Shown: positions 5,438 through 53,907, counted from the first letter of the stretch. The stretch is DNA of 64,000 bases from IMGVR_UViG_3300018891_000001:124001-188000; one strand, 5' to 3'. The notes: a model not told the origin generated them from the sequence alone. A program made the numbers and translations.

Positions 5438-5464
5438 TATAATAAGCATATTGAAATGTATTAC
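5438..5464 (+). promoter_or_regulatory. -10 box TATAAT plus operator-like GAAATGTATTAC
   Basis: TATAAT 5438-5443; motif variant 5453-5464. Confidence 0.6.
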
Positions 5465-5483
5465 AAGATTAGGAGGAATTGAG

Positions 5484-5882
5484 ATGTTAATAGGGCCAAG
5501 TATTACACTCGAAAAACTAGAAGAACATATGAAAAATCGTGTATATGAAATTAAAATGGATCTACCTAAGCTAGAAAAGGAATTTCGACGTTTAGGTGAA
5601 GAATTTAAAATGATTCCACGTACTATCATCAATGAAGAAGGAGAAGAAATTACCAACCCTGATTTTATTGCTATTCCCAAACGCATGAGAGAGATTGAGG
5701 AAGCTATTCAAGAATTACAAGATCAGCAAGAATTTATGGAAGCCAAGCTGATGGAGTTAGAAGATATTGAGGAACGCTCTAAAGGACGAGGTAATGTTAT
5801 CAAATCTAGAGATAAAATTATACTAAGTCTTAATGACTGCATTAAGCTAGGAATTACCTTGAATGAAGAAACCAAAGCATAA
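5484..5882 (+). CDS. Hypothetical coiled-coil protein
   Basis: RBS aggagg before ATG 5484. Confidence 0.7.
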   Translation: MLIGPSITLEKLEEHMKNRVYEIKMDLPKLEKEFRRLGEEFKMIPRTIINEEGEEITNPDFIAIPKRMREIEEAIQELQDQQEFMEAKLMELEDIEERSKGRGNVIKSRDKIILSLNDCIKLGITLNEETKA

Positions 5883-5902
5883 GTCATAAGGGGAAGATAA
5901 AA

Positions 5903-6262
5903 ATGATCACGGTAGAAAAGCAGCGTATGCTAAAAAAATATGAAGAACGCTTGCAACTTCGTGAAGAATATGAACGAGAGAGAATAAAAGAAGTTCATAT
6001 CAAAGCCAAAAAGAGTGACCGATACGGCAAAGAAGATATGTTGAATCTTCCTCGTCATCGGATGTATGGTAAATGTTTGGATTTTGAAGAATGTCCAATC
6101 GATTATAAGTGCCGAAATTACAATTCCACTTATATGAAATGTGTGAACTGTGAATTAGTCAAAACCGGTGACATCTGTCAGAAAAAACACATTCATAATC
6201 CAGAAACCTTCAATATGATGATTAGTCGTGAAAGGATTGACCTAGATGACAAAAATTCGTAA
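5903..6262 (+). CDS. Hypothetical Cys-rich protein
   Basis: CLDFEECPIDYKC...CVNC...C pattern. Confidence 0.65.
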   Translation: MITVEKQRMLKKYEERLQLREEYERERIKEVHIKAKKSDRYGKEDMLNLPRHRMYGKCLDFEECPIDYKCRNYNSTYMKCVNCELVKTGDICQKKHIHNPETFNMMISRERIDLDDKNS

Positions 6263-6378
6263 ATGGCTTGCATTATGAATCAGACCAATTGTTTGAAAAA
6301 GACATTTATCTTGATTTGATAGTGAATAAAGATGGGAATATTGTGGTTGCTACATTATCGGAAAAGGAATGAGTTGGT

Positions 6379-6627
6379 ATGGCAAGAAAAAATCAATCAG
6401 CTTGGTCAGGAATGAATTTTCAACAAATCATGATGCAGCAATCCTATCAAGCCGCTTCATCACCTGCATATTGCCGATATTGTGGACATGACATTAAACA
6501 GCCTACACAAAACAGCACACAAACTGATACAGGTCGTTGGTATGATAGCTGGGAACTGCAAAACAATGCTCATTATAAGTGTTATGATCGACATCGATAT
6601 CAAATGATGCAAACATACAGGAGGTAA
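6379..6627 (+). CDS. Hypothetical protein with CxxC
   Basis: CRYCG; operonic position. Confidence 0.6.
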   Translation: MARKNQSAWSGMNFQQIMMQQSYQAASSPAYCRYCGHDIKQPTQNSTQTDTGRWYDSWELQNNAHYKCYDRHRYQMMQTYRR

Positions 6628-6632
6628 CAATA

Positions 6633-7172
6633 ATGACAACAGTAAACATTGAAGCAAAAGCAATTTCCTATTTTAATCGTGAACTTTCCTTAATTAAAGA
6701 TGCTAGTATTCATGCACTCTTTCATAATGCACTAGCGGTAGCTCCACAGTCTTTTCATGATGATGAGGAGTTATTAGAATATGTGAAAACCGCCTTTCAT
6801 ATTCTAAGAGGCATGTTGGAACAGCGAAACGTAACGGGACTAATACGAGATGCACTATTAGGAACAACATTAATCTGCGATATTATGTATAACGAATTTA
6901 ATGATGATATGAGACATTTACATACTGTAGCAGTACGAAAATACCTAGAAAAACATCAAGTGCACAAAGATGTGCAACAAGGATTATGGGAAAATATTAT
7001 GCGTGCAGTTGAAGCGCATAATGGCGACAAAGGAGCTTCTCCGATTCTAGAAGCCAAACCAGGAACAGCAGAATATGAAGTAGCTCAAGCTTTTGCGGTT
7101 GCTCGATTAGGATTTGTAAAATTAGACTGGGAGGAAGTTTATCGTGACATCGAAAGCAAAACAACGAATTAA
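6633..7172 (+). CDS. HD-domain-like protein, degenerate
   Basis: Layout resembles phage HD proteins (D.L...L..D, AVEAHNG) but has ICD where LHD is expected. Confidence 0.5.
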   Translation: MTTVNIEAKAISYFNRELSLIKDASIHALFHNALAVAPQSFHDDEELLEYVKTAFHILRGMLEQRNVTGLIRDALLGTTLICDIMYNEFNDDMRHLHTVAVRKYLEKHQVHKDVQQGLWENIMRAVEAHNGDKGASPILEAKPGTAEYEVAQAFAVARLGFVKLDWEEVYRDIESKTTN

Positions 7173-7386
7173 AACCACGGTTTTCTGGAGTGGAATCGCT
7201 TCTTCAATTATTCTATTTTCCCAATCAGTAACTACATTACTAGGATATGATATTCCAGAAGAAACCATTGCAACCATTATGGCTGCTGTGAATAGCTTGC
7301 TTTCTGTTTTAACCCTTAGCGGTGTATTGGTAAATCCAGAAGAAGTCGATTCGTTTCAGGCATTTAAAGTAAAAATAAAAAAATAA
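7144..7386 (+). CDS. Holin, phi LC3-like
   Basis: RIKTTVFW...two TM segments...VNSLLSVLTLSGVLVNP. Confidence 0.75.
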   Translation: MTSKAKQRIKTTVFWSGIASSIILFSQSVTTLLGYDIPEETIATIMAAVNSLLSVLTLSGVLVNPEEVDSFQAFKVKIKK

Positions 7387-7403
7387 AATAGGGGGAACTA
7401 CTC

Positions 7404-7676
7404 ATGGACTTTAGCCAAGCTTTGCAATTATTAAAAGAGGGCAAAAAATTAAGACGTAAAGGATGGAATGGAAAAGGAATGTGGATCGTTCTTATGCCAG
7501 CTCTTTATCTAGAACCGGGCATGGTGAATGGTCGAACACGAAAACATATTGGAGAAAATACACCACTTGATTCTCAGCCGTATTTCGCTATGTGGACCGC
7601 TCAAGGGAAATGGCAACCAGGATGGTTGGCTTCTCAAGCAGATTTACTCGCTGAAGATTGGGAAGTTGTAGAATAA
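7404..7676 (+). CDS. DUF2829 / Tad2-like protein
   Basis: MDFSQALQLLKEGKKLRRKGWNGKGMWI...W.ASQADLLAEDWEVV. Confidence 0.85.
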   Translation: MDFSQALQLLKEGKKLRRKGWNGKGMWIVLMPALYLEPGMVNGRTRKHIGENTPLDSQPYFAMWTAQGKWQPGWLASQADLLAEDWEVVE

Positions 7677-7683
7677 AAGATAG

Positions 7684-7729
7684 AAAAATATCCCTCACTG
7701 CAACAACATATAGTGAGGGATATTTTTTT
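7684..7729 (+). terminator. Rho-independent terminator, likely bidirectional
   Basis: aaaaatatccctcact / agtgagggatattttttt. Confidence 0.85.
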
Positions 7730-7741
7730 ACATACTATATC

Positions 7742-7800
7742 TTGTATTTAAGAATACAACATTATATAATAAGACTTGCACGCATGGAGTAATGCATTAC
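7742..7800 (+). promoter_or_regulatory. sigmaA-type promoter with palindromic operator-like site
   Basis: TTGTAT-17-TATAAT (7742-7770); GTAATGCATTAC 7789-7800. Confidence 0.7.
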
Positions 7801-7843
7801 AAAAAATAAAGAAAATTACTAAAAAGTTAGGAGAGAAGAAGCA

Positions 7844-10381
7844 ATGTTTACAAAAAGTTATATTGACAAGCTAAACAAGGATATTGAAAAATATACGACC
7901 AAATATCCAGAACGAAAAATCTTTCCAATCACTGAAAACATGACTCGCACATTTGAAGGCGTATCTCAAACTGTCATGCTTGACCGGTATTCTCATAATG
8001 ATATGCTTCATGAAACATTGGAATCCGGAGATTTTGTTGTATTAACAATCAAAGATGATCCAAAATGGCCAACCCAAGGATTTGGATGGGTGCAATCCAT
8101 TGATTGGAAACACCGAAAAGCCCTTGTTAAAGTGGATGAGCAATTTGCAGGAGCGTTAGAAGGAGAAGAAGCAGATACTCTTTTGGTAGAACGAAATTTA
8201 GATGTGGTCCAAAAACCATTAGAAATTTTCTATGAGCAAATTGCTAAACGAAACGCATGGGCACTTTCCCAAGTAGAGAAAACTGAAGAGAAAAGACAGG
8301 AATGGTTTGAAAAGTTCTATCACGAATTAAAAGAACTTCATTTTGTGCCTGCAGGACGTGTGTTGCATGGAGCAGGATCGGGAACAGACGTTACATATTT
8401 CAACTGCTATGTAATGCCATTTGTCAAAGACTCCCGTGAAGGCATTTCTGAGCATCGTGGTAAGGTCATGGAAATTATGTCTAGAGGCGGCGGAGTTGGA
8501 ACAAACGGCTCTACCTTGCGTCCTCGAAATGAAGTGGCCCGTGGAGTCAATGGAAAATCATCGGGTTCAGTGTCATGGTTAAATGATATCTCAAATCTAA
8601 CTAACTTAGTTGAACAAGGTGGAAGCCGCCGTGGTGCACAAATGATTATGCTTGCTGATTGGCATCCGGATATTGTAGAATTTATCATTTCAAAAATGCA
8701 AAATCCAAAGATTTTGAAATTCATCATCGAGAATACCCATGATGAACATATCAAAGAAGTCGCAAAAGCCAAGTTAAAATTTGTACCATTGACCGAAAGA
8801 GAAAAAAGAGCTTATGAAGCTTTAGTTAGATCTCATGTCACAGAAGATATAGATCCTATTGTAGAAGAAGCAAAGTCTATTCTAGCCGATGGTGGTACAT
8901 GGTCTGTTCATAACCCAGAATTTTTAACAGGTGCCAATATATCTGTCTGCTTAACTCATGAGTTCATGAAAGCTGTAGAGAACGATGGAGAATATAAACT
9001 TCGTTTCCCTGATGTCGCTAATTATACAGAAGAAGAAATGAAAGATTATAACGAAAAATGGCATGAAATAGGCGATGTACGTGAATGGGAAAAGATGGGG
9101 TATGATGTCCGTATACATCGTAAGATTCGTGCAAGAGAATTATGGAAACTGATTAATATTTGTGCAACGTATTCAGCGGAGCCAGGCATTTTCTTCATTG
9201 ATAATGCCAATGATATGACAAACGCCAAAGCATACGGACAAAAAGTTGTAGCAACCAATCCATGCGGAGAACAGCCATTAGCCCCGTACTCTGTTTGTAA
9301 TCTTGCAGCTATTAACTTAGCAAAAATGGCAAGTTTTGAAACTGGTACAGTAGATTTTGAAAAATTAAAACGTACAGTAGAAATAGGTGTACGTATGCAA
9401 GATAATGTCATTGATGCAACTCCTTATTTCTTACCGGAAAACACAAAACAAGCTAAAGGAGAACGACGGGTCGGATTAGGGGTCATGGGATTGCATGATT
9501 TGCTGATTAAATGTGGCTTGGAATACGGAAGTAAAGAGGGAAATCAATTAATAGATAAAGTATTTGAAACAATTGCCTGCACCGCTTATCGAACCAGTAT
9601 TGAATTAGCAAAGGAAAAAGGAAGCTTCCCATTCCTTACTACAGAAGACAAGTTAGATGAAATTGATTTACGAATGAAATTTGTCAATACCGGTTACATG
9701 AAAAACATGCCAGAAGATATTCGAAAAAGTATTTTAAAACACGGTATCCGAAATAGTCACTTGCTGACGGTAGCTCCAACTGGAAGTACAGGCACCATGG
9801 TAGGAGGAAGCACAGGCCTAGAACCATATTTTAGTTTCGTTTATTATCGTTCCGGCCGATTAGGTAAATTCATTGAAGTCAAAGCACCGATCGTTCAAGA
9901 ATATTTAGAATTTAAAGGGTTGCCACTTGATACACCACTAAGTGAATTGCCATCATACTTTAAAGGGGCAATGGACCTTACACCGGAACAACACGCTGAT
10001 GTTCAATGCATCATTCAACGTTGGGTTGATTCCAGTCTTTCTAAAACCGTTAACGCTCCAAAAGGATATACGATTCAACAAGTACAAGAAGTATATGAAC
10101 GACTGTGGAAAGGCGGAGCAAAAGGGGGTACCGTTTATGTCGATGGAAGTCGAGATGCACAGGTATTATCGTTGACCCCAGAAGAAAACGATGTAGAGGA
10201 ATTGGATATTCAAGACACAAAAGAAGAACTTGCAAATGAATATCTCCAAACTCAAGAAACCATCGTTTACGGTAGTGAAGTTGGAAACATCTGCCCTATT
10301 TGTAAGGCAGGAGAAGTCAAAGACTTTGGAGGTTGCAATAGCTGCTCTAATTGCGGAGCTCAGTTAAAATGCGGCTTATAA
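7844..10381 (+). CDS. nrdJ: Class II (B12-dependent) ribonucleotide reductase
   Basis: FVPAGR, NCYV, GGSRRGA, TNPCGEQPL, TVAPTGS, C-terminal Cys ribbon; no small-subunit gene nearby. Confidence 0.92.
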   Translation: MFTKSYIDKLNKDIEKYTTKYPERKIFPITENMTRTFEGVSQTVMLDRYSHNDMLHETLESGDFVVLTIKDDPKWPTQGFGWVQSIDWKHRKALVKVDEQFAGALEGEEADTLLVERNLDVVQKPLEIFYEQIAKRNAWALSQVEKTEEKRQEWFEKFYHELKELHFVPAGRVLHGAGSGTDVTYFNCYVMPFVKDSREGISEHRGKVMEIMSRGGGVGTNGSTLRPRNEVARGVNGKSSGSVSWLNDISNLTNLVEQGGSRRGAQMIMLADWHPDIVEFIISKMQNPKILKFIIENTHDEHIKEVAKAKLKFVPLTEREKRAYEALVRSHVTEDIDPIVEEAKSILADGGTWSVHNPEFLTGANISVCLTHEFMKAVENDGEYKLRFPDVANYTEEEMKDYNEKWHEIGDVREWEKMGYDVRIHRKIRARELWKLINICATYSAEPGIFFIDNANDMTNAKAYGQKVVATNPCGEQPLAPYSVCNLAAINLAKMASFETGTVDFEKLKRTVEIGVRMQDNVIDATPYFLPENTKQAKGERRVGLGVMGLHDLLIKCGLEYGSKEGNQLIDKVFETIACTAYRTSIELAKEKGSFPFLTTEDKLDEIDLRMKFVNTGYMKNMPEDIRKSILKHGIRNSHLLTVAPTGSTGTMVGGSTGLEPYFSFVYYRSGRLGKFIEVKAPIVQEYLEFKGLPLDTPLSELPSYFKGAMDLTPEQHADVQCIIQRWVDSSLSKTVNAPKGYTIQQVQEVYERLWKGGAKGGTVYVDGSRDAQVLSLTPEENDVEELDIQDTKEELANEYLQTQETIVYGSEVGNICPICKAGEVKDFGGCNSCSNCGAQLKCGL

Positions 10382-10393
10382 GGAGGAACATAA

Positions 10394-10681
10394 ATGATCT
10401 TCCGAGCACCACCTGGACACTGGTTATTAAGCAAACAAGAACTCCAAAAAATGATGGATTGCATTGCACAGGGAGAAGTACAAAAAGTTACAGAATACCT
10501 TCGATTTTGCTTAGAGGAAATTCAATTTTACGATGACATTCGTCGGCAAATCGAACAAAAGAAAATGCTCAAAGAAGATGGCGAACACTTTAAAGCGTTG
10601 TCCCTAGAAAATAAAATTCGTCAAAAAGTGCGGCAACAAACTGAACGAAGCCAACTAATACAATCTCAATTTCTATCTTGA
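10394..10681 (+). CDS. Hypothetical protein
   Basis: RBS aggagg. Confidence 0.7.
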   Translation: MIFRAPPGHWLLSKQELQKMMDCIAQGEVQKVTEYLRFCLEEIQFYDDIRRQIEQKKMLKEDGEHFKALSLENKIRQKVRQQTERSQLIQSQFLS

Positions 10682-10699
10682 TCTTTTGTAACATATTAC

Positions 10700-10729
10700 A
10701 AAAAAGTGGGCGACAAACCCACTTTTTTT
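10700..10729 (+). terminator. Rho-independent terminator
   Basis: aaaaaagtggg-cgacaaa-cccacttttttt. Confidence 0.85.
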
Positions 10730-10785
10730 ATATATAATAAAGATATTCGAAGAAAAATCAAGAAAAACAAAGAAAGGAGAACATT

Positions 10786-10863
10786 ATGGAATTAGTGCGT
10801 TCCTATCTTCAGAATTATGGAATCGTGGACTACATTATTATTTTCAAATTCACATTCAAATAA
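10786..10863 (+). CDS. Short ORF starting MELVRSYL (25 aa; possibly frameshifted)
   Basis: Strong RBS aaaggag; an overlapping frame continues to about 10950. Confidence 0.45.
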   Translation: MELVRSYLQNYGIVDYIIIFKFTFK

Positions 10864-10936
10864 GCGAATCTGGAAAACTACTCATTAAACCTTGTTGTAT
10901 CAACTCATATCATCCTCCAAAGGAGAGTGTTATCGT

Positions 10937-11188
10937 ATGGAATTAGTTCAACAATTATTGACAAAAAAGCAAGAAACAAAAAACAAAATTCAGCGATTAA
11001 AAGAAGAAGGGCTTTTGGTTCCTAAATCCATTACCATGAATGGAATTTATTCATCAGATAACTTAACATATGTTGGCCCCCTTGTAACTGGATCATTCTC
11101 AAGTCAATTAATAATTAATGATCAAGTGATTGGCAACGTCACTGTTACAGGAATGTCCCGGGAGGCGGAATACCAAACATGGAGATGA
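10937..11188 (+). CDS. Hypothetical protein (MELVQQLL...)
   Basis: RBS aggag; ATG 10937. Confidence 0.6.
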   Translation: MELVQQLLTKKQETKNKIQRLKEEGLLVPKSITMNGIYSSDNLTYVGPLVTGSFSSQLIINDQVIGNVTVTGMSREAEYQTWR

Positions 11189-11589
11189 TCAATAAATATA
11201 TCGAGCTTCACCGACCAGAAACATGGTATGAAAAAATGCTAAAGAACTTTTTCCGTTATCAATGGCAAACTCCTTCATACAAAAGAATTCTTTTACAGAA
11301 AATATATGAAGAAACAAAAGAACTAAAAGCAGAACTAGATGATTTCTATAATCGAACTAGATCTATGCCTAGAAGATCTGGGAAATCTTATTACTATAAT
11401 TCCATTTTATATGAGATTGCACAGAAAGAATTTGTGTGGCGCACAATCAAGTTACGATGGAACAATTTACGTAATGATCTTTTCATGGAGGAGAATGAAG
11501 ATGGAACTATGCCTTCAATATTTACTAATCCAATCTTCTCACAAACGACAAAAAGAATACGAGACCATCAAACAATTGGACCATATTAA
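11179..11589 (+). CDS. Hypothetical protein (MEMINKYI...)
   Basis: RBS ggagg. Confidence 0.65.
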   Translation: MEMINKYIELHRPETWYEKMLKNFFRYQWQTPSYKRILLQKIYEETKELKAELDDFYNRTRSMPRRSGKSYYYNSILYEIAQKEFVWRTIKLRWNNLRNDLFMEENEDGTMPSIFTNPIFSQTTKRIRDHQTIGPY

Positions 11590-11654
11590 AAAACATATTA
11601 CAAAGAAAGCGGAACGAGATTGGGATTTATTATTTAGGAGGTTGACAAGATCTG

Positions 11655-12389: not shown

Positions 12390-12395
12390 TATCAC

Positions 12396-12827: not shown

Positions 12828-12960
12828 ATTCAAAGGACTTCATCATCCTGAATTTACAGGAAGCTATCATGTATTTGACTATGACTTCAAATATCCAAGG
12901 AAAATTCATGTTCATCGCTGTCCAAACTGTGGAGATTACAAAAAAATTATGGTGGATTAA
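12799..12960 (+). CDS. Small DUF1660-like protein (53 aa, not in ORF track)
   Basis: RBS ggaggtg; MMLFRKLICKFKGLHH...HRCPNCG. Confidence 0.6.
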   Translation: MMLFRKLICKFKGLHHPEFTGSYHVFDYDFKYPRKIHVHRCPNCGDYKKIMVD

Positions 12961-13048
12961 GTATGGAGATCGTATGTGAATAAACTGTATATCGTATGTT
13001 TGGAAAGAGATGATAAATGCATTATAAAAAGATTGTGGTGTGATATAA

Positions 13049-13624: not shown

Positions 13625-13699
13625 CCTTATGAAGAATAAAATATTGTAATGTGTTACAATGAATTTAAAGGATACAGGGGAATCTAAAGGAGGATTCCC

Positions 13700-14599: not shown

Positions 14600-14604
14600 A
14601 AATG

Positions 14605-14635: not shown

Positions 14636-14794
14636 CTTTATCTATGTTATAATGTAGAATATGAAAGACATTACAAGGAAAAATGAGAGAGGTGGAGAAA
14701 ATGCAAGGAAAAATGGTGGATATCATTGAAGATATCGGAAAAGGAATTAAACAAGAGCAATTAGCACCAAAGACTGTAAAGGAGGAAAATCATA

Positions 14795-15856: not shown

Positions 15857-16627
15857 ATGAGTTACATTCATGCGCACGATCGTTACGTCATAGAATTTCA
15901 AAAAACAGGAGACTCTAGTAAACTCATTCTTCAATACAAAAATTTTCTTAATAAATATGCCACTTTGTTGTATCATGATTTGATTGATTTTCGAAACCAT
16001 GATATCCGTTGTTTCTTAGCTTGCTATATTTCCGATAAAGAAATCAATCAAAATCTTCGTAGAGGGAAATATCATTCTTCCGAGGCAATGGCTTCTGCGT
16101 ATCGTGCATTACAATACTTGCGTTCAAAATTACGAAACCATACTTATCAAGAAATAGAGCACGAATTATTAATTCCATTTCTTCGATGTGCTCAAATTTA
16201 TGAACCTAAAGGAAAAGGGTTTCAAAGCTATTTGTATAAAACTTACCGCTACGCCCTAAAACGACACTTGGATCGTATTCCAGTTGATATGTTGGATTAT
16301 CATCGATGGGTGTATCAAAATTTGTGGGTGGAAGAAGAGGAAAAAGAAGAAGAACTTCCTAGCGAACTTATCATCGAAATGGATCAATTTTTTGAATTAA
16401 GTGATCCTCGTTGGATTCATGGCAAAAGGGCAGGGGAACCCTTTAACCATCTGAAACCTCATGAACGTTACATACTAGTAAAATACTATTATGAAGGGTA
16501 CACCGATAAAGAAATTGCAAGAATGCTCCCCTACCACCCAAAATCTATTCATCGAATTCGTATGCGACTAATAAAATATTTTAAGCAGTTGTATGAGAAA
16601 GGGGAACTCAAATGTCTCAGGCTCTAA
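15857..16627 (+). CDS. Divergent sigma70-family RNA polymerase sigma factor
   Basis: Region-2-like LILQYKNFL and FQSYLYKTYRY; region 4 LKPHERYILVKYYYEGYTDKEIARML. Confidence 0.75.
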   Translation: MSYIHAHDRYVIEFQKTGDSSKLILQYKNFLNKYATLLYHDLIDFRNHDIRCFLACYISDKEINQNLRRGKYHSSEAMASAYRALQYLRSKLRNHTYQEIEHELLIPFLRCAQIYEPKGKGFQSYLYKTYRYALKRHLDRIPVDMLDYHRWVYQNLWVEEEEKEEELPSELIIEMDQFFELSDPRWIHGKRAGEPFNHLKPHERYILVKYYYEGYTDKEIARMLPYHPKSIHRIRMRLIKYFKQLYEKGELKCLRL

Positions 16628-16866: not shown

Positions 16867-16914
16867 TTGTTTTCTTTCATATTCTGTAATATAATGATAT
16901 TGTAATGCATTACA
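16867..16914 (+). promoter_or_regulatory. sigmaA-type promoter with perfect palindrome TGTAATGCATTACA
   Basis: TTGTTT-17-TATAAT (16867-16895); palindrome 16901-16914. Confidence 0.7.
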
Positions 16915-19690: not shown

Positions 19691-21003
19691 TGGCTAACAA
19701 AATTTGTAGCGTAATGCATTTCATTTTCCTATCAATAATGATACAATAGATATAGATTATTGATAGGAGGAAGCAATAATGGGGAAACTTTATACGTATG
19801 ATATTATCTGTGAAACATGTGGAGAAACTGTAACTGTTACACGTTCAAGAAAAAATTCGAGATATTGCTCTAAATCGTGTGCATCCAAAGCGCCTCGAAA
19901 ATACAAAAACATCAACGAACAAGAAATTATTGATATGTATCAAAACGGATTATCCTTACAAAAGATTGAACAACAAACAAGCATCAAGATAGAGAAAATA
20001 AGAAAGATCATTCATCAAATAGGAATTATGAGAAGCAATAAAGAAAACTCTCGCAAATATCATATTAATCATGATTATTTTGAAACGATTGATACTGAAC
20101 ACAAAGCATATTGGCTTGGATTTATATATGCTGATGGATATATTGCAAAAAGAAAGGGTAATCAAAAATGCATCGGTATTGCATTATCAAGAAAAGATGA
20201 AGATCATATAAAAAATTTCTTGTTCGACGTTGATTCTAATTATGTAATTAGACAGTATACAGGAACAACTCCAGATGGAAAAGATTTTGAATATTCAAGA
20301 GTGATTATTACATCTGATAAAATGTTCGATGATTTATTGAATAAAGGAGTTGTCGAACACAAAACATTGGTTCTTCAATTTCCTTCATTCGAAATTGTCC
20401 CAAAAACTTTAATGCATCATTTTATCAGAGGATACTTTGATGGTGATGGATCATTCTCAAAATGCATAGAAGGATATACTCTTCCATATAAAGTGAGAAT
20501 CTGTGGAACAAAAGAGTTTCTTCAAGGCATTGAGAATTTTATTGGAATCAAAGGGAATTACAGTAAACGTCATAAAGATGATAAGAATAATTGGACATTA
20601 GAATACTCCAATAAAGAAGATATCCTTCAATTTGCTAATACCATTTACGAATATTGCACAATCTGCTTAAACAGAAAATATCAACGCTACAAAGAAATGT
20701 TGGATCAGTCGTCCTAATAAGAAACTATTAGGATTATCACTCGGTGAATTGCTGGAAACTCCTTAGAGCCTTATACACCACAACGTAGTTGGAAACGACA
20801 AGCGTGATGGTTTGAAAAGTATAAGGATTGGACAATCAGCAGCCAAGCTCCTAAGTCACAAGATATGGAGAAGGTTCAACGACCATCCCGTGGGAGGGAG
20901 TAGGGCAAATGCCCGAAGTGCCGAGCACCCAAACCGTTAAGGTCGGTGGGTGAAGATATGGTCTATTCCCTATACAAATATGTCGAAAGACAGGGTATCA
21001 AAG
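19691..21003 (+). mobile_element. Group I intron 1 in dnaE, HEG in P1 loop
   Basis: Core motifs gaattgctggaaac, aatcagcagccaag, gttcaacgacca, aagatatggtcta; ends in G; removal restores PD|LDIDY; the U.G register at the 5' site is not clean, so the boundary may be off by 1. Confidence 0.85.
19779..20717 (+). CDS. Intron-encoded LAGLIDADG homing endonuclease with N-terminal Zn finger and HTH
   Basis: YWLGFIYADG and FIRGYFDGDG; CETCG...YCSKSC. Confidence 0.9.
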   Translation: MGKLYTYDIICETCGETVTVTRSRKNSRYCSKSCASKAPRKYKNINEQEIIDMYQNGLSLQKIEQQTSIKIEKIRKIIHQIGIMRSNKENSRKYHINHDYFETIDTEHKAYWLGFIYADGYIAKRKGNQKCIGIALSRKDEDHIKNFLFDVDSNYVIRQYTGTTPDGKDFEYSRVIITSDKMFDDLLNKGVVEHKTLVLQFPSFEIVPKTLMHHFIRGYFDGDGSFSKCIEGYTLPYKVRICGTKEFLQGIENFIGIKGNYSKRHKDDKNNWTLEYSNKEDILQFANTIYEYCTICLNRKYQRYKEMLDQSS

Positions 21004-25117: not shown

Positions 25118-25141
25118 TGTTATAATATGTAATGCATTACA
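25118..25141 (+). promoter_or_regulatory. Extended -10 promoter with operator-like palindrome
   Basis: TG-T-TATAAT 25118-25126; TGTAATGCATTACA 25128-25141. Confidence 0.7.
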
Positions 25142-29876: not shown

Positions 29877-29977
29877 AAAAGTTTCACCTCCATTGTCATA
29901 AGACGGGCTACACCTCTCTATATATATAATACACAACTGTAATGCATTTCATACGACAAAAACGGAGGAATACAAAA

Positions 29978-34288: not shown

Positions 34289-34840
34289 ATGGAACACGAA
34301 AAACTGAATATCTTTGATCCGAATGTCATTTACTACGTGCAACTGCCAACAGGAAAGACTCGGAGATTGAGTGAAGAAGAACTAGAAAAAATAACACTCA
34401 ATTCCCCCAACAACATTCCTGAGTTAAACGGTAAAAAGACATGGATCAGTAACTACGTTGCTACGTTCTGGATGCCGTTTATGAAGCCAGGGCCATTTGC
34501 GGTTTACGTTCAATTGCAGAAAATGGCATATGGGGATAAAGATCATGCATTTCCATCTGTTCCGTATTTAGCCATGATTCTGGGTATTAGTGAACGAACT
34601 GTACAAAATTACATTGATCATTTGGTGGATCTGGGATTCGTAATTGTATTAGAACGGTTTGAAGCACAAAGCAACCGGCAGCTAAGTAATTTATATTTGC
34701 TATCAACAACGACTCCGTTTCTTCCTAGGGAGAAGTATGAGAAGTTGCCGAAGAAGTTACAAAGAGAACATGACCGATTTATGGATTACATAAAGTTTAA
34801 AAAGATTTTACACGAAGAACGAATTCCTGACTATGAGTGA
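34289..34840 (+). CDS. Replication initiator-like winged-HTH protein
   Basis: FAVYVQLQKMAY...AFPSVPYLAMILGISERTVQNYIDHLVDLGFV; directly upstream of the iteron array. Confidence 0.7.
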   Translation: MEHEKLNIFDPNVIYYVQLPTGKTRRLSEEELEKITLNSPNNIPELNGKKTWISNYVATFWMPFMKPGPFAVYVQLQKMAYGDKDHAFPSVPYLAMILGISERTVQNYIDHLVDLGFVIVLERFEAQSNRQLSNLYLLSTTTPFLPREKYEKLPKKLQREHDRFMDYIKFKKILHEERIPDYE

Positions 34841-43698: not shown

Positions 43699-43738
43699 CT
43701 CCTTTTTTAAAGGGTGTGTAATGCATTACACACTTGGT

Positions 43739-45067: not shown

Positions 45068-45173
45068 TCTAGTATCCTCCCTTTATATGTTTCTTTTTTT
45101 CACCCAATAACCCGGAGGGTTTGTAATACATTACAATAATAACAGAATAAACATGATCTTACAACATCTGATG

Positions 45174-49753: not shown

Positions 49754-50849
49754 CGATACCTTCTAGGTCGGGAATTTAACCCAACCACTCCCCTTTCGGA
49801 GAGGACGAGACTATATCATCACTCAGGCTCGGAGACAGCCTTCATCGTGTCGGGCGCTCGTGTCGGGTTTATTGGTCGGCATCCTCACCCGTTAGTCGTT
49901 GAACCTTCCTAGCTACTCAAGTGCCATTCGCTAGGCTTGGCTGCTGATTGCCATATCCTTTCGGACTTAGGTTTCCAGCAATTCACCCGATTTTACATGG
50001 GCTACAGGATAATGTTTTCGTTCCAGATAAATCGTTGCATTGTTGTAGAGGAAATTTACAAATTTCGCATACAATCCATTTCCACCGAATCGATAACCAA
50101 ATGCTCTTCCATTCTCTTTGTATTTTTCTCTTAGTGGCAATCCGTGTTCATGTAGAACTTTGGAATAAGCATCTAGGAATTCTTTTGTACCAATCACTTC
50201 TATATTCACTTGAGGTCTGGAATTATCTCTCGGATCATAGAAGTAATGAATGCTTCCATCTCCATCGAAATATCCTCTCATAAAATGATGCAATAAATGA
50301 TGTGGCACTTGCTCTTCTGTTGGGAATTGCAAGGTCAATGATTTGGCAGGCGTACAGCCTTTATCAATTAAATCCTGTACAATTTCCATCGATACGAGTT
50401 GTAATCGATAGCATAGATGACCATTCACGTTTCTTGGTTTGATGTCCATTTCAGGAGAGATAAAATCTCGAAATCGCTCAAGATGATTAACATCTTTTTC
50501 AGATAAGCTTAGTTCCAATGTTCCCCGTGGTTCATAAACTGAGCCATCGGCATATAAGAAGCCTAACCAATATGCTTTTTCCTCGGTATCGATTACTTTA
50601 AACGCATCGGTGTTGTGATTGTATTTACTTCTTCCTGTTGTCATCCCTCTGGATTTTATCTGTATCCCATCTGCTTTTAACATTTGGGATAATTTCTTGC
50701 GGTCAAAACCTGTGAGCTCTGAAATCTTTCTCAACGATTTACCTTCCAAAAACATTTGCTTTGCCATTTCATACATGTTATCACTCCCATAGGTATATTT
50801 CCTATACCCATAATAACATGCTATGAAATGCATTACGACCTGTTTGTTA
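49754..50849 (-). mobile_element. Group I intron 3, splitting the SF2 helicase Walker A, HEG in P1 loop
   Basis: P1 atgggt/gcccat with U.G; P10 cctgt/acagg; gaattgctggaaac, aatcagcagccaag, gttcaacgacta, gatatagtct; removal restores GEMG|TGKT. Confidence 0.92.
49967..50776 (-). CDS. Intron-encoded LAGLIDADG homing endonuclease
   Basis: YWLGFLYADG, FMRGYFDGDG; start ATG 50776 with RBS gggagtg. Confidence 0.9.
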   Translation of the reverse strand: MYEMAKQMFLEGKSLRKISELTGFDRKKLSQMLKADGIQIKSRGMTTGRSKYNHNTDAFKVIDTEEKAYWLGFLYADGSVYEPRGTLELSLSEKDVNHLERFRDFISPEMDIKPRNVNGHLCYRLQLVSMEIVQDLIDKGCTPAKSLTLQFPTEEQVPHHLLHHFMRGYFDGDGSIHYFYDPRDNSRPQVNIEVIGTKEFLDAYSKVLHEHGLPLREKYKENGRAFGYRFGGNGLYAKFVNFLYNNATIYLERKHYPVAHVKSGELLET

Positions 50850-51824
50850 ACCCATTTCTCCAACGATAAAACAAAAATCATCTTCCACCAATGTTTTAGA
50901 AACACCCATAACAGTATTGGCTTGCGGTGGATATAGACCTGTAATTCCTTGCTGATTGGCACATAAATTCACATCACGAAAAGCGGGATGATGTCGTTCT
51001 TTCTCCGGATCAAAACGAACAGCAATATTCTCTTGGATACGTTTTCCTAGCTCTGGTGCAAAGTGAGTTAAATAATCATCAATCGTCTGACAATGAGGTA
51101 ATATGGATTGACTTTCATCTCGGCCATCTTCTTCAATTGCAAAGTTTAACTCATATCCTTGAACTCCTTCTGAGATAATGTTTTCTAGCTGTTCTTCTGT
51201 AATCATAAGAAGTCCTGCTTCTAGAGAATAATTGGAACCAAAACACTTCACGGTAAGAGGTGTATAATAACCTTCCTCTTCTAGTCGTTCGACAATATAA
51301 TCAGTCCATTCCTCTAGCATTGGTGTATTATATCGGTCATTCAGAACATGAAACACTTGTTTTTTGTAATTACCATCCCATGCCAAAATGAGTTCAGCTA
51401 AATGGCTTGGAATAGATTCTGGATCTAGACCTTGATTGATTCGTTCTCTTTGTTCTGCTAACCATTGATTACGTGCTTTTAAATCTGGTTTTGCATTTTT
51501 GGCCACCATCAAAATATGAGTTAAATCATCAACTTTTAATACCTCTTCATCATACGGCTTTTTAGACGTAGGAATAGCAAAAACACTATGACGAATAAAT
51601 CCTGTTTCGTATCGATTTCCTTCAGCACGATAAATTTGTCCCGTTTTTCCATCTTGCATAAGCCATGCGGCTTGCTTTACTTTGGAATCCACACCAATCA
51701 AATTGGCTAAATAGATGACATTATCGCTATCTGTCACAAGTAGATCACAATAGGCTATGCCGCTTGAAGAATGACGGTTATACATTTCTAATGTATATAT
51801 TTCCGGCATATAAAGGCGTGGCAT
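50850..51824 (-). CDS. SF2 helicase, exon 1
   Basis: RBS gaggtg; ends LYPPQANTV...CFIVGEMG. Confidence 0.85.
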
Positions 51825-52035
51825 TTCTTTCACCTCTTTGTTTGTATTTTTTAGGCTTCCCATATTTTGATTTCATTTCTTATCCATCGTTTTTCAATAT
51901 TTCGTTGATGTTTATTACGGCGACGCTTATCTTTCCCTTTTACTCGTGGTGTTGGGTATTGCCCATCTTTTGTCCAATCCCAGTTACCATATGTTTTATT
52001 GGTTTCAATTTTAATTTGACGGTACATGTAATCAC

Positions 52036-53421
52036 CTACATGATTTTTCGGAATTGTCCTTTGGCATCTAAGATTTTTACGCCAATATTGTAAAATTCTC
52101 GTTCTACAACTTTGGTTAAGCCATCATCATCGGTTTCTGTAAATTCACGAACATCTTTAATGGCACTTCCTTTTACAAGATGCTGATCGGGTCCAGTGCC
52201 AATATATCCATTCAAAAATCCGGATGTGAGTAATAACATGATATGTCCTTTATGAAGTGGAGATGGTGTCACAGGATTATAGTTATTAAAAACTTGAGAA
52301 TTCTTCTCTTGATATACTTGCAATAACTTGGATTTTTGAAGGGATAATAAAGCTTCGCTTCCCGTAACCGGACCTACTCGGAATGATTGAATTTCATCTG
52401 GATGACAAGCCGGAACCTCATAAATAGGCTCCAATTGTGGTTCAATTACTCCATACATAGCATCCACTTTAGCTCGGAAGACTTGCTTTTCATATTGTTC
52501 ATGTCCTTCAGGAACTGTAATTTCACGAATCTTTCCAAAAGACTTATAAGGTCGTTCTTTGGTTCGAGCAATGGCCTTTCCTAATTCATAATGTTCTCGA
52601 GTCGCTTTCTTTCGTTTTTTGGCTAAGATAATGCATTTTCGATATTCAAGATATTCATCATCATCCAAACGGAGGATTCTAATATCTTCGTACTGATTCA
52701 CCAATTTAAAAGCAATCGTATCGTCAATAAATTCTTTTGGAGTAATCATGATTAAAATACCACCTGGGCGCAGGTATGTAGTTGCTCGTTGCAGCAGAAA
52801 CGCATCCCATCGCATGCTAGACATTTTCTTTTGTTGCTCTTTCATGGCCATGCGCCATGCTTTCACACGTTTTTCTAATTCGGCACGAATTTTTCTTTCA
52901 ATCCGCTCTTGACGCTGCTCTTCTGTTTCTTGGTCTTTCCGTTCGGTGTTATCTTCATTTAGTGCGCCAAAATCAATTTGCTTAGAAATTTGAGCTTGCA
53001 GTCGCTTCTTTTCTTCTTCTTGACGCAAGACTTGTTCTCGAATTTCTTTTTCAAAATTTGGCATATTATATGGATCAATCTGCTCAAACACTTCATGAAT
53101 CAATCGATCATCAACATAAGGATGAACCACCATAAGAGAGAAAACATCATTGGTGATCTTAGCTTCAGAGCGATAATCGGATTGGGAAACACGATAATAG
53201 GAATAAGTGTTTCTCATAGAATCACAATCCGCTGGTAATTCATCTACTCCATATAAAAAACGTTGGTCATGTTTTGAAGTTAACTGATGAAGAAAAGACC
53301 CATTGAAAGCTCTCCAGTCCATAGCAGTAATAGGTTGACCTTCCGGAAATTTTAAATACATTTGCAGCAATTTGGTTGTATATTGACTAAGCGGATGATT
53401 AATTTTCCATGGTTGTGACAT
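52036..53421 (-). CDS. SAM-dependent DNA methyltransferase-like protein (DUF6094-like), degenerate
   Basis: LYGVDE, LMVVHPY in place of NPPY, YLRPGGILIMITP. Confidence 0.6.
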   Translation of the reverse strand: MSQPWKINHPLSQYTTKLLQMYLKFPEGQPITAMDWRAFNGSFLHQLTSKHDQRFLYGVDELPADCDSMRNTYSYYRVSQSDYRSEAKITNDVFSLMVVHPYVDDRLIHEVFEQIDPYNMPNFEKEIREQVLRQEEEKKRLQAQISKQIDFGALNEDNTERKDQETEEQRQERIERKIRAELEKRVKAWRMAMKEQQKKMSSMRWDAFLLQRATTYLRPGGILIMITPKEFIDDTIAFKLVNQYEDIRILRLDDDEYLEYRKCIILAKKRKKATREHYELGKAIARTKERPYKSFGKIREITVPEGHEQYEKQVFRAKVDAMYGVIEPQLEPIYEVPACHPDEIQSFRVGPVTGSEALLSLQKSKLLQVYQEKNSQVFNNYNPVTPSPLHKGHIMLLLTSGFLNGYIGTGPDQHLVKGSAIKDVREFTETDDDGLTKVVEREFYNIGVKILDAKGQFRKIM

Positions 53422-53436
53422 ATTCTCATCTCCTTT

Positions 53437-53865
53437 TTAATGATGATAATCAACACATGTATACAAGTCTTCATAAACTTGATCAATGACTTCCATTGGT
53501 ACACCTGCATTCAGTAAACCTGTCACATTTTTTAAAGTCGGACCATGATATGTTTTTACATCTTTCCAAGAATCTGTACCATCAAGGGTTTCGATGGCTT
53601 CGCATTCAGTCACTATAAATGGACAGGGCGAACTTAATGTATATACCATAGATTCATCTGCATTTACTCCCTTGTATTCAAATCGAATCAAAGCTCGATA
53701 CCATTGACCCTCTACTTGAATACGTTTGTTTAGCATATAGAATTTCTGATTAGAACGACTATCCGTGTACCATCCTTTTCGTTTTAAGAAATGAAAGGTT
53801 CGATTGCTAATATTATTGGTTTCAATGGAAATACGATTACAGAGGTAAAGACGAATTAATTCCAT
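53437..53865 (-). CDS. Hypothetical protein (MELIRLYL...)
   Basis: RBS aaggagag; operator-like palindrome at 53881-53896. Confidence 0.7.
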   Translation of the reverse strand: MELIRLYLCNRISIETNNISNRTFHFLKRKGWYTDSRSNQKFYMLNKRIQVEGQWYRALIRFEYKGVNADESMVYTLSSPCPFIVTECEAIETLDGTDSWKDVKTYHGPTLKNVTGLLNAGVPMEVIDQVYEDLYTCVDYHH

Positions 53866-53880
53866 GATCTTCTCTCCTTA

Positions 53881-53907
53881 TTGTAATGCATTACAAATTA
53901 TATCATA
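53881..53907 (-). promoter_or_regulatory. -10 box with perfect palindrome TTGTAATGCATTACAA
   Basis: TATGAT on minus strand (53902-53907); palindrome 53881-53896. Confidence 0.7.

What the first reader, a model, noticed from the sequence alone, without database searches (positions are those of the whole stretch)
5453..53896. Genome-wide palindromic operator GTAATGCATTAC marking a putative regulon
Seen: exact GTAATGCATTAC at 7789, 16902, 25129, 43718 (extended to a 20-bp palindrome) and 53883. One-mismatch copies at 19711, 29939, 45123 and 50825; two-mismatch copies at 5453, 10688 and 13646; a weaker candidate at 14663. All lie outside called CDSs, and many sit within about 20 bp downstream of a sigmaA -10 box (7765, 16890, 25121, 29925, 5438, and 53902 on minus). 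They precede nrdJ, the Cas4-like/remA/dnaE operon, dut, the FtsK module, dnaN, the MTase-helicase operon and two intron HEGs. Established: a site over the +1 region usually means repression. The arms resemble CcpA cre (TGWAA-N4-TTNCA) but lack the central CG that CcpA requires. Inference: an element-specific master repressor regulon.
Basis: partly seen in the sequence, partly recalled or inferred. Interest (0 to 1): 0.7.

Follow-up and report, generated by a model that had tools for sequence, protein, structure and literature searches.

The report
Phage-wide palindromic operator at promoters
A 16-base palindrome (core GTAATGCATTAC) sits on the core promoter of about 27 operons of a 216-kb Bacillales phage, is conserved at the same promoters in related ~200-kb phages and is absent from a relative's host chromosome, so it is most likely the operator of a phage-encoded dimeric regulator that controls nearly the whole conserved gene set.

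Summary
GTAATGCATTAC occurs 5 times exactly in the window (0 expected) and 11 times in the 215,870-bp phage. With near-copies there are about 27-30 sites, almost all intergenic.

The full site is a 16-bp palindrome, TTGTAATGCATTACAA. It is the most over-represented 10-mer in this phage and in three relatives whose proteins are only about 50% identical. Orthologous promoters keep a site in 33 of 55 comparisons, against a 14% background. In Oceanobacillus profundus, which carries a relative as a 195-kb contig, 13 of 15 near-perfect 14-mers lie on that contig. Host CcpA/cre is therefore rejected.

Sites either start 1-9 nt after a TATAAT box or overlap the -35/spacer. The spacing varies, and deviations from the palindrome are never compensated. 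That fits a dimeric protein occluding promoters, not a hairpin or a fixed promoter element.

The best binder candidate lies outside the window: a 171-aa winged-helix plus coiled-coil protein with weak sites at its own promoter in six of the seven genomes or contigs checked. This assignment, and repression rather than activation, are inferred.

The regulon covers structural as well as replication genes. The phage also encodes a YonO-like RNA polymerase and a sigma factor, so a positive promoter role remains a rival. It is a new member of a known kind, the dispersed operator regulon.

The parts
5453..5464 (.). Operator-like site GAAATGTATTAC (2 mismatches). TATAAT at 5438-5443 ends 9 nt upstream. 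A 132-aa gene starts 19 nt downstream.
   Evidence: PWM 16.3
7789..7800 (.). Exact site. TATAAT at 7765-7770 ends 18 nt upstream. Precedes the ribonucleotide reductase large subunit gene (7844-10381).
10688..10699 (.). Weak site GTAACATATTAC (3 mismatches, flanks TT/AA), followed directly by a terminator-like hairpin. Function doubtful.
   Evidence: PWM 9.7
13646..13657 (.). Site GTAATGTGTTAC (2 mismatches). TAAAAT ends 3 nt upstream. Precedes a subtilase-like protease gene (13700-14599). The identical variant sits upstream of the G003 orthologue.
14663..14674 (.). Weak site GAAAGACATTAC (3 mismatches). TGTTATAAT ends 9 nt upstream. Heads the operon 14795-16848, which contains RusA and the sigma-factor gene. 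The orthologous positions in G001 and G003 carry strong sites.
16902..16913 (.). Exact site. TATAAT at 16890-16895 ends 6 nt upstream, so the predicted +1 is at the first G. Heads the Cas4-like exonuclease / RemA-like / DnaE operon.
19711..19722 (.). Site GTAATGCATTTC at the end of dnaE exon 1. TACAAT lies 19 nt downstream. Precedes an intron homing-endonuclease gene (19779-20717).
25129..25140 (.). Exact site. The extended -10 TGTTATAAT (TATAAT at 25121-25126) ends 2 nt upstream. Precedes the dUTPase gene (25164-25679).
29939..29950 (.). Site GTAATGCATTTC. TATAAT at 29925-29930 ends 8 nt upstream. Heads the operon 30084-34074, which ends with FtsK/SpoIIIE-like.
43718..43729 (.). Exact site inside a 20-bp palindrome, between dnaN and a 149-aa gene on the minus strand. 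No clear -10 adjacent.
45123..45134 (.). Site GTAATACATTAC. On the minus strand TATTAT ends 1 nt upstream. Precedes dnaN (43739-45067, minus).
50825..50836 (.). Site GAAATGCATTAC. On the minus strand TATTAT lies 9 nt downstream, so the site covers the -35/spacer. Precedes the homing-endonuclease gene (49967-50776, minus) of the group I intron in the SNF2 helicase gene.
53883..53894 (.). Exact site. On the minus strand TGATATAAT (53897-53902) ends 2 nt upstream. Heads the operon 53865-47312. The same promoter geometry is kept in G001 and G002.
15857..16627 (+). Sigma-70-family factor gene (256 aa), inside a motif-headed operon. Part of the phage's own transcription apparatus.
57185..58171 (-). 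328-aa winged-helix protein between the primase and UvrD helicase genes. Conserved in relatives, but no site at its own promoter. A secondary binder candidate.
34289..34840 (+). No orthologue in G001-G003, which keep the motif, so it is unlikely to be the binder.

Best explanation
The motif is the operator of a phage-encoded, homodimeric, sequence-specific DNA-binding protein.

The full site is the 16-bp palindrome TTGTAATGCATTACAA. It lies on the core of sigma-A-type promoters that head about 27 transcription units, covering replication, nucleotide-metabolism, lysis-adjacent and virion genes. There are two arrangements. In the first, the site begins 1-9 nt after a near-consensus -10 box, often TGnTATAAT, and so covers the start site. 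In the second, its left half (TTGTAA) stands where the -35 hexamer would be, 17-18 nt before a TATAAT.

A bound dimer would keep RNA polymerase off these otherwise strong promoters, which is repression. One factor would thereby hold nearly the whole conserved gene set silent, presumably during a carried, non-integrated state of the phage.

The most likely binder is the 171-aa winged-helix plus coiled-coil protein at genome 203729-204244 (minus strand, outside the window). It appears to regulate itself through weaker sites.

Shown: existence of the motif, its symmetry, its confinement to the element, its promoter position and its conservation. Inferred: protein binding, the sign of regulation, the identity of the binder and the carried state.
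For: Enrichment and position:
- There are 11 exact genomic copies and none of the reversed control.
- 19 of 23 copies with 0-1 mismatch are intergenic, against 10% intergenic DNA.
- AATGCATTAC is the top 10-mer in G000-G003, with no motif hypothesis fed in.

Conservation:
- Relatives with portal identity of 50-72% carry 5-10 exact copies each.
- A site is kept upstream of orthologues in 33 of 55 comparisons, against a 14% background (P about 3e-15).
- The unusual portal-promoter geometry is also kept.

Confinement to the element:
- In O. profundus DSM 18246, 5 of 5 exact 12-mers and 13 of 15 14-mers with up to 1 mismatch lie on the 195-kb phage contig, which is 4% of the genome.
- In A. shizuokensis, 2 of 2 exact copies lie on the phage contig.

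Promoter coupling:
- A -10 box with at most 1 mismatch ends 1-10 nt upstream of 39 of 79 sites, against 11.8% of matched control positions.
- TG at -15/-14 is present in about half of these promoters.
- The gap ranges from 1 to 9 nt, yet is kept per promoter among orthologues.

Symmetry:
- The consensus is symmetric. That matrix was built on both strands, but in gene orientation the position 2/11 variants fall equally on either half (4 and 4 in G000).
- None of 81 deviations in the core is compensated, and the flanks do not covary.
- An RNA hairpin would be worth only -1.5 to -2.5 kcal/mol.

Binder candidate:
- Pfam finds a winged helix. The model has pLDDT 87, with a winged helix followed by a 60-residue helix.
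- The recognition helix SEATVHR is invariant in 25 homologues of 40-71% identity.
- Weak or degenerate sites lie at its own promoter in G000-G003, Bacillus sp. ILBB4 and A. shizuokensis.

Carried state:
- Relatives are whole ~195-225-kb contigs in isolate assemblies.
- No integrase or resolvase was found. A partition protein is present.
Against: - There is no transcript or binding evidence. No RNA run was listed, and the complex tool does not fold protein-DNA jobs.
- About half of the sites have no near-consensus -10 box just upstream. A few, such as 43718, have none nearby at all.
- The regulon includes virion genes. In a purely lytic phage these would more naturally be switched on than off.
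- The phage encodes a YonO-like RNA polymerase and a sigma factor. No other repeated intergenic motif that could serve as their promoter was found.
- 0305phi8-36 has a distant homologue of the candidate binder with an almost identical helix (SNATVHR). It has no GTAA-N4-TTAC sites.
- One relative (L182) shows no clear site before its homologue.
- No lysogeny module was identified.
Confidence: 0.55

Rival explanations
1. The palindrome is a positive promoter element. Either it is the recognition or initiator sequence of the phage's own transcription machinery (the YonO-like single-subunit RNA polymerase or the phage sigma factor), or it is the site of a factor that recruits that machinery. On this reading it marks the middle and late genes.
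For: - The phage encodes a YonO/QDE-1-like polymerase (Pfam RdRP, 34.8 bits against a cut-off of 23.8) and a sigma-70-family factor.
- The motif is missing from the blocks of small non-conserved genes, including the polymerase gene's own block. It heads the conserved replication and virion operons.
- It is the only repeated intergenic motif apart from ribosome-binding sites.
- For the relative 0305phi8-36, a phage-specific repeated motif in the same position was proposed as the promoter of the orthologous polymerase (PMC2147016).
- The YonO promoter is still undefined (PMC5467207).
Against: - A perfect two-fold symmetric site gives no direction, and a monomeric polymerase has no need for symmetry.
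- The distance to the adjacent -10 box varies over 9 bp, so the two cannot form one rigid promoter.
- Ribosome-binding sites begin 3-8 nt after many sites. The start must therefore lie in or before the motif, which leaves no room for an activator and a multi-subunit polymerase together.
- The adjacent -10 boxes are near-consensus, with TG extensions, and should not need activation.
- The 0305phi8-36 motif is different in kind: an oriented hairpin with covarying arms.
Confidence: 0.2
2. The sites are bound by a host regulator, such as CcpA (cre-like), Rex-like or another global factor, which couples phage expression to host physiology.
For: The outer arms TGWAA/TTWCA and their spacing match the cre consensus (sequence; own knowledge of cre). 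The motif is conserved across phages of different host genera.
Against: - The centre is GC, not the CG of cre.
- In a host that carries a relative, only 2 of 15 near-perfect sites lie in 4.6 Mb of chromosome, and none of the exact 12-mers does.
- The hosts range from Oceanobacillus (phage GC 35%) to Alicyclobacillus, yet the motif does not change.
Confidence: 0.04
3. The palindrome acts as a nucleic-acid structure: a 5' RNA hairpin for stability or processing, or a DNA cruciform.
For: It would lie at the 5' end of the transcripts. The site at 43718 extends to a 20-bp palindrome (-9.8 kcal/mol). The 0305phi8-36 counterpart really is a hairpin with covarying arms.
Against: - None of 81 deviations is compensated. 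Thirty sites break pair 2/11.
- The typical hairpin is worth only -1.5 to -2.5 kcal/mol.
- The sites that stand at the -35/spacer would not be transcribed from their own promoter.
Confidence: 0.04
4. The sites serve a DNA function unrelated to transcription: partition or condensation sites, restriction-modification targets, or replication or packaging signals.
For: A 16-bp palindrome in dispersed copies resembles parS or KorB operators (own knowledge). A partition protein is encoded.
Against: - No ParB N-terminal domain was found.
- The sites are tied to -10 boxes and gene starts rather than scattered.
- The ATGCAT core is not depleted elsewhere in the genome: 116 copies, of which only 20 lie in sites.
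Confidence: 0.04

Closest known systems
Phage P1 C1 repressor and its dispersed operators (own knowledge)
   Same: One element-encoded repressor acts at many operators scattered over a large, non-integrated prophage genome. The operators overlap the promoters of many separate operons, including replication functions, and the repressor gene is autoregulated.
   Different: P1 operators are asymmetric 17-mers bound by a monomer, and the late virion genes are controlled indirectly through Lpa. Here the site is a perfect palindrome and sits directly on virion-gene promoters. A plasmid-prophage state is only inferred.
SPbeta MrpR and the SPBRE repeated element (PMC10516654)
   Same: A repeated element was noticed in silico in intergenic promoter regions of a large Bacillus phage and later shown by ChAP-seq to be the master repressor's site. 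SPbeta also encodes a YonO polymerase.
   Different: SPBRE is a 15-bp motif at about 10 promoters, bound by a recombinase-fold protein. No recombinase fold or integrase was found here. The candidate binder is a winged-helix protein, there are about three times as many sites, and they include structural operons.
Mycobacteriophage L5 gp71 stoperators (PMC9283540)
   Same: Dozens of repressor sites lie in short intergenic spaces all over the genome and silence lytic operons, structural ones included.
   Different: Stoperators are asymmetric, are bound by a monomer, and work in one orientation by blocking elongation. Here the site is symmetric and tied to -10 boxes.
Streptomyces phage phiC31 conserved inverted repeats, and RK2 KorA operators (own knowledge)
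   Same: Palindromic operators of 12-17 bp are present in many copies on one mobile element. They overlap -10 or -35 regions and are bound by a dimeric element-encoded repressor.
   Different: The sequences, protein families, hosts and element types all differ. The phiC31 repeats lie mainly at early promoters.
The 21-bp promoter-candidate motif of phage 0305phi8-36 (PMC2147016)
   Same: It occurs in a distant relative (portal about 41% identical). It is a phage-specific repeat just upstream of the ribosome-binding sites of non-early genes, and it is absent from the host.
   Different: That motif is an oriented hairpin with variable, covarying arms, a conserved loop CGTTCGCACG and a following TGTA. 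It has no adjacent TATAAT. The sequence is unrelated, and 0305phi8-36 has no GTAATGCATTAC copy with up to 1 mismatch.
CcpA cre site (own knowledge)
   Same: The arms TGWAA and TTWCA are separated by 4 bp, and the site lies at or after +1.
   Different: The centre is TGCA rather than NCGN, and the site is not found in the host chromosome.

Membership tests
Dispersed operator regulon of a mobile-element repressor (P1 C1, phiC31 CIR, SPBRE, KorA type) | Many copies of one site, confined to the element | tested here: met
   About 27-30 sites in G000. In O. profundus, 13 of 15 near-perfect sites lie on the phage contig.
Dispersed operator regulon of a mobile-element repressor (P1 C1, phiC31 CIR, SPBRE, KorA type) | Sites overlap core promoter elements (-35, -10 or +1) | tested here: met
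   A -10 box ends 1-10 nt upstream of 39 of 79 sites, against 11.8% of controls. In a second class the site is 9-10 nt upstream of TATAAT. The promoters are predicted from sequence only.
Dispersed operator regulon of a mobile-element repressor (P1 C1, phiC31 CIR, SPBRE, KorA type) | An element-encoded cognate repressor, usually autoregulated | tested here: inconclusive
   The candidate winged-helix plus coiled-coil protein has sites at its own promoter in six genomes or contigs. Binding is untested, and the 0305phi8-36 homologue argues for caution.
Dispersed operator regulon of a mobile-element repressor (P1 C1, phiC31 CIR, SPBRE, KorA type) | A quiescent (prophage or plasmid) state in which the regulon is silenced | tested here: inconclusive
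   Relatives are whole contigs in isolate assemblies and a partition protein is encoded. However, no integrase, resolvase or ParB was found, and the window's own phage comes from a metagenome.
Dispersed operator regulon of a mobile-element repressor (P1 C1, phiC31 CIR, SPBRE, KorA type) | Occupancy lowers transcription | not testable with these tools
   No RNA run was listed.
CcpA cre / LacI-family operator | Central CpG in TGWAANCGNTNWCA | tested here: not met
   The centre is TGCA in 93-96% of the seed sites.
CcpA cre / LacI-family operator | Sites present at host catabolic operons | tested here: not met
   No exact 12-mer and only 2 near-perfect 14-mers in 4.6 Mb of host DNA.
Promoter of a phage single-subunit RNA polymerase (T7, N4 or putative YonO type) | The phage encodes such a polymerase, and its gene lies outside the motif-bearing classes | tested here: met
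   The Pfam RdRP hit is above the cut-off. There is no site upstream of that gene.
Promoter of a phage single-subunit RNA polymerase (T7, N4 or putative YonO type) | An oriented, asymmetric consensus that fixes the start site and the direction | tested here: not met
   The consensus is two-fold symmetric and cannot be oriented.
Mycobacteriophage stoperators | Asymmetric site in one orientation relative to transcription | tested here: not met
   The site is a palindrome.
0305phi8-36 21-bp motif | Hairpin with covarying arms and a conserved oriented loop | tested here: not met
   No covariation is seen here, against clear covariation in 8 of 8 copies there.

The most novel reading that the evidence does not exclude
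The palindrome, together with its neighbouring TATAAT, is the element through which the phage's own transcription apparatus is brought to the middle and late genes. That apparatus is the YonO-like two-barrel RNA polymerase or the phage sigma factor, possibly helped by the winged-helix dimer. If so, this would be the first defined promoter class for a YonO-type polymerase, a question left open for SPbeta.
Probability: 0.15. Interest if true: 0.8.

Novelty: new member of a known kind. Interest (0 to 1): 0.45.

Why it matters
The clade is unstudied. Its members are ~190-230-kb phages related distantly to 0305phi8-36, and they turn up as whole extra contigs in assemblies labelled Oceanobacillus, Alicyclobacillus and Bacillus sp.; homologues of the candidate regulator also lie on ~210-225-kb contigs from Priestia and Paenibacillus, and homologues of the phage sigma factor on ~190-210-kb contigs labelled B. 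subtilis, B. velezensis and B. cereus group.

A single 16-bp site on about 27 promoters gives a direct handle on how such a large genome is switched as a block. It also predicts the regulator, and strains that can be ordered (DSM 18246, NBRC 103103) allow the tests. If the site instead turns out to be a positive element, it would define how a YonO-type polymerase or a phage sigma factor finds its genes.

In practical terms, the operator and regulator pair would be an orthogonal switch for Bacillus.

Tried and rejected
- Megablast of 10 kb against GenBank phages found no match.
- Single-protein scans for relatives in viral and genome contigs found nothing. The DNA pattern scan and an alignment-based scan did work.
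- The generic two-hexamer promoter scan showed no enrichment over shuffles and did not pick up the motif promoters.
- No RNA sequencing run was listed. Only four DNA runs from a biocrust metagenome hold the phage.
- Complex prediction with the winged-helix dimer plus the operator DNA was not folded. It counts neither for nor against binding.
- Foldseek of the winged-helix model returned only generic winged-helix regulators at E > 1e-3.
- The exact-sequence look-up of the Priestia homologue found no record.

Rejected explanations:
- Host CcpA or Rex.
- Hairpin or cruciform.
- Restriction-site effect.
- ParB/parS-like system.
- vB_BceM_WH1 sharing the motif. Six of its eight one-mismatch hits lie in the 40 kb whose annotation I read, and all six are inside CDSs.
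- A second repeated promoter motif. None was found.

The literature search for the 12-mer found only an unrelated NFIL3 paper.

Full report
**What the window is.** The window is bases 124001-188000 of a 215,870-bp virus record. The record's two ends share 61 identical bases, which most likely reflects a circular assembly. GC content is 37%. The DNA is held by four biocrust metagenome runs, and no RNA run was listed.

The portal protein is 33-41% identical to those of Bacillus phage 0305phi8-36, vB_BceM_WH1, Edson, KLEB27-3 and Moorella phage MTATph1. This is therefore a distant member of the 0305phi8-36-like large myoviruses.

I called 253 genes with a crude caller of my own. Genes at 77-19975 and 159710-215769 run on the minus strand, and those in between run mostly on the plus strand.

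**The observation.** The copies at 10688 and 14663 have three mismatches. No exact copy appears in 100 shuffles.

The whole genome holds 11 exact and 12 one-mismatch copies. Nineteen of these 23 are fully intergenic, although only 10% of the genome is intergenic (P about 7e-16). An unbiased count shows that AATGCATTAC is the commonest non-trivial 10-mer of the genome, with 29 copies, 23 of them intergenic.

Aligned sites extend the consensus to TTGTAATGCATTACAA. Position 2/11 tolerates T or A, and the four central bases vary a little.

**Relatives.** A pattern scan of viral contigs found several ~190-230-kb records with multiple hits. Five of them hold 5, 10, 8, 8 and 5 exact copies and none of the reversed control. 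Their portals are 50-72% identical to ours.

One record is the complete contig NODE_7 (194,705 bp) of Oceanobacillus profundus DSM 18246. Another relative is a 198-kb contig of Alicyclobacillus shizuokensis NBRC 103103. Homologues of two phage proteins lie on 190-225-kb contigs from B. subtilis, B. velezensis, the B. cereus group, Priestia megaterium, Bacillus sp. ILBB4 and Paenibacillus.

I fetched three relatives whole (G001-G003, GC 34-46%). In each of them the same 10-mer is the top word.

Upstream of orthologues of G000's site-bearing genes, a site is present in 33 of 55 comparisons, against about 14% for genes in general (P about 3e-15). All three relatives keep a site before the orthologues of eight genes: five that head virion or virion-region operons, the gene heading the SNF2-helicase operon (window 53437-53865), the radical-SAM ribonucleotide-reductase activase-like gene, and the winged-helix gene discussed below. 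The portal promoter keeps one in two of three.

The named distant relatives 0305phi8-36, KLEB27-3 and MTATph1 lack the motif. WH1 has no exact copy and eight one-mismatch matches; the six that lie in the 40 kb whose annotation I read are all inside coding sequences.

**Host or phage factor?** In the 4.8-Mb O. profundus assembly, all five exact 12-mers lie on the phage contig. So do 13 of the 15 14-mers with at most one mismatch, which is roughly 150 times the chromosomal density. Both exact copies in A. shizuokensis lie on the phage contig.

The centre of the site is GC, where cre needs CG. A host regulon (CcpA, Rex-like and the like) is rejected.

**Position relative to promoters.** In gene orientation, -10-like hexamers pile up at 15 to 7 nt before the first G of the core. 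Of 79 good intergenic sites in the four genomes, 39 have a TATAAT with at most one mismatch ending 1-10 nt upstream. The figure is 11.8 +/- 1.9% for control positions at matched distances from start codons.

About half of these promoters carry TG at -15/-14. The -35 region shows only a weak TT(G).

The gap between the box and the site ranges from 1 to 9 nt, in two loose groups (1-3 and 6-9). It is nevertheless kept per promoter among orthologues. One example is TGnTATAAT, then 2 nt, then the site, before the gene at window 53437-53865 and its G001 and G002 orthologues.

In a second arrangement, TATAAT lies 9-10 nt after the core. The left end TTGTAA then stands at the -35 position with a 17-18-nt spacer. 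This holds for the portal promoter in G000 and G003, for window site 50825 and for genome site 4058.

Ribosome-binding sites often begin 3-8 nt after the site, and start codons follow at 13-60 nt. Transcripts must therefore start in or before the site.

**Structure or sequence?** Thirty sites break pair 2/11, 25 break pair 5/8 and 14 break pair 6/7. In total, none of 81 deviations in the core is compensated, and the flanks show no real covariation. An RNA hairpin of the 16-mer is worth only -1.5 kcal/mol.

The element is therefore read as sequence, in two symmetric halves. That is the signature of a dimeric DNA-binding protein. ATGCAT is not depleted outside the sites, so restriction avoidance is not involved.

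**Which genes.** In the window, the sites head these genes and operons:
- the ribonucleotide reductase gene;
- a subtilase-like protease gene;
- the operon with RusA and a sigma factor;
- the Cas4-like exonuclease / RemA-like / DnaE operon, in which DnaE is split into three exons by two group I introns;
- the dUTPase gene;
- the operon ending in FtsK/SpoIIIE;
- dnaN and the gene after it;
- the SNF2-helicase operon;
- two intron homing-endonuclease genes.

Outside the window, sites head the portal, tail and virion-protein operons and the radical-SAM ribonucleotide-reductase activase-like gene. The blocks of small, non-conserved genes carry almost none (1-19975, 159710-166178 and 205-216 kb).

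The regulon is thus the conserved core of the phage, not only replication functions.

**The phage's own transcription proteins.**
- The 1159-aa gene at genome 14188-17667 matches Pfam RdRP above the cut-off. It is a YonO/QDE-1-like polymerase, like orf99 of 0305phi8-36.
- The 256-aa gene at window 15857-16627 is a sigma-70-family factor. It has a region 4 hit just under the cut-off. A profile of the four orthologues hits SigH, SigF, FliA and WhiG chains in the PDB. NCBI names homologues of 52-58% identity as sigma factors.
- No integrase, resolvase or ParB domain was found. A partition protein is present (phrog_691).

**Binder candidates.** The 171-aa gene at genome 203729-204244 (minus strand) is a winged helix followed by a 60-residue helix. 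It has two sites around its own promoter, at 204273 (2 nt after CATAAT) and 204336. Its homologues in G001-G003, Bacillus sp. ILBB4 and A. shizuokensis also have weak or degenerate sites upstream.

Its recognition helix SEATVHR is invariant in 25 homologues of 40-71% identity.

There are caveats. One relative (L182) shows no clear site. The distant 0305phi8-36 homologue gp230 has the helix SNATVHR, yet that phage has no such palindromes. Foldseek gives only generic winged-helix matches.

Other conserved DNA-binding proteins are a 93-aa MerR-like protein just upstream of this gene, the 328-aa winged-helix protein at window 57185-58171 (no site at its own promoter) and the RemA-like protein.

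**Weighing the mechanisms.** Repression is favoured for three reasons.
1. The sites sit on +1 or on the -35/spacer, with variable register. Steric occlusion tolerates that, whereas recruitment does not.
2. The associated -10 boxes are the best in the genome. TATAAT is exact in 9 of 22 motif-bearing upstream regions, against about 10 of 72 others, so the promoters should be active unaided.
3. Weaker sites at the candidate's own promoter are the usual pattern of autoregulation.

That relatives persist as whole contigs in cultured isolates, without an integrase but with a partition protein, gives such a global repressor a purpose. This last point is an inference.

The main rival is a positive promoter element for the YonO-like polymerase or the phage sigma factor. 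It draws on the gene-class distribution, on the lack of any other repeated motif and on the precedent proposed for 0305phi8-36 (PMC2147016). I located that motif: it is an oriented hairpin with covarying arms and the loop CGTTCGCACG, unrelated to ours. The YonO promoter remains undefined (PMC5467207).

The rival does not explain the perfect symmetry, the variable spacing to the -10 box, or the lack of room between the site and the ribosome-binding site.

**Comparison and novelty.** In function this resembles the dispersed operator networks of P1 C1, phiC31, L5 stoperators and RK2 KorA (own knowledge for P1, phiC31 and KorA; PMC9283540 for stoperators). It also resembles SPbeta MrpR/SPBRE (PMC10516654).

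It differs in four ways: the site is a perfect palindrome, it sits directly on virion-gene promoters, the candidate binder belongs to a different protein family, and the element is a ~200-kb phage. A full-text search for the 12-mer found no phage paper.

I file it as a new member of a known kind. There is a 0.15 chance that it is instead the first defined promoter class for a YonO-type or phage-sigma transcription system.

Noticed in passing
L005:14188-17667 (genome 14188-17667, minus strand): A 1159-aa protein matches Pfam RdRP (PF05183, 34.8 bits against a cut-off of 23.8). This is a YonO/QDE-1-like single-subunit RNA polymerase, conserved at 31-33% identity in three relatives. It lies in a block of small genes that carries no motif.
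   Followed up: partly
window 15857-16627 (+): A 256-aa sigma-70-family factor is encoded by the phage. A PDB profile search hits SigH, SigF and FliA, and NCBI names its homologues sigma factors. The Pfam region 2 scan of the genome missed it.
   Followed up: partly
window 20689-20985, 21674-21941 (+), 49787-50082 (-); L006:12259-12543: Four group I introns. Two split dnaE into three exons, one splits the SNF2 helicase gene, and one splits a conserved gene upstream of the portal gene. Two of their homing-endonuclease genes have their own motif site.
   Followed up: partly
window 58270-59379 and 59947-60732 (-): The UvrD-type helicase is encoded in two pieces (the N-terminal and C-terminal domains), separated by 567 nt. 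There is no Rfam hit in the gap, so this may be an undetected intron or a genuinely split gene.
   Followed up: no
L013:5584-5664 (genome 209584-209664): The variant site GTAATGCCTTGC is followed by a conserved hairpin (CCCCAAGTT...AACTTGGGG) and the sequence AGAAGTGATA. The whole arrangement recurs in G002, G003, Bacillus sp. ILBB4 and the GCA_007676345.1 contig. It may be a conserved leader or small RNA. Rfam gave no hit.
   Followed up: partly
whole genome (G000): The hexamer CTTAAG is completely absent from the 216-kb genome, whereas three relatives have 15-37 copies each. This suggests avoidance of an AflII-type restriction system in this phage's host.
   Followed up: no
L178/L179 (0305phi8-36, 144270-198199): The phage-specific 'promoter candidate' of 0305phi8-36 is a hairpin. 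Its 4-5-bp arms covary in 8 of 8 copies, its 10-nt loop is invariant and oriented, and a TGTA and the ribosome-binding site follow it.
   Followed up: partly
L009:2827-2838 (genome 74827-74838): One exact copy of the motif lies inside a 2301-aa structural gene, 279 nt before the next gene. It could be an internal promoter or operator, or a chance survivor.
   Followed up: no
L006:4345-5977 (genome 22345-23977): A 1.6-kb stretch without called genes holds one tRNA gene (L006:4737-4808), with a motif site at its left edge (22364). It precedes a gene for a partition protein (phrog_691).
   Followed up: partly
window 37555-38145 (-); L012:11616-14471 (-): A Doc-like toxin domain protein is encoded in the non-conserved block. 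Elsewhere there is a prokaryotic ubiquitin-like / E2 / ThiF(E1) gene cluster, conserved in G001, G002 and the ILBB4 contig.
   Followed up: no
window 10688-10730: The weak three-mismatch site at 10688 is followed at once by a terminator-like hairpin and a T-run. It is placed at an operon end rather than at a start.
   Followed up: no
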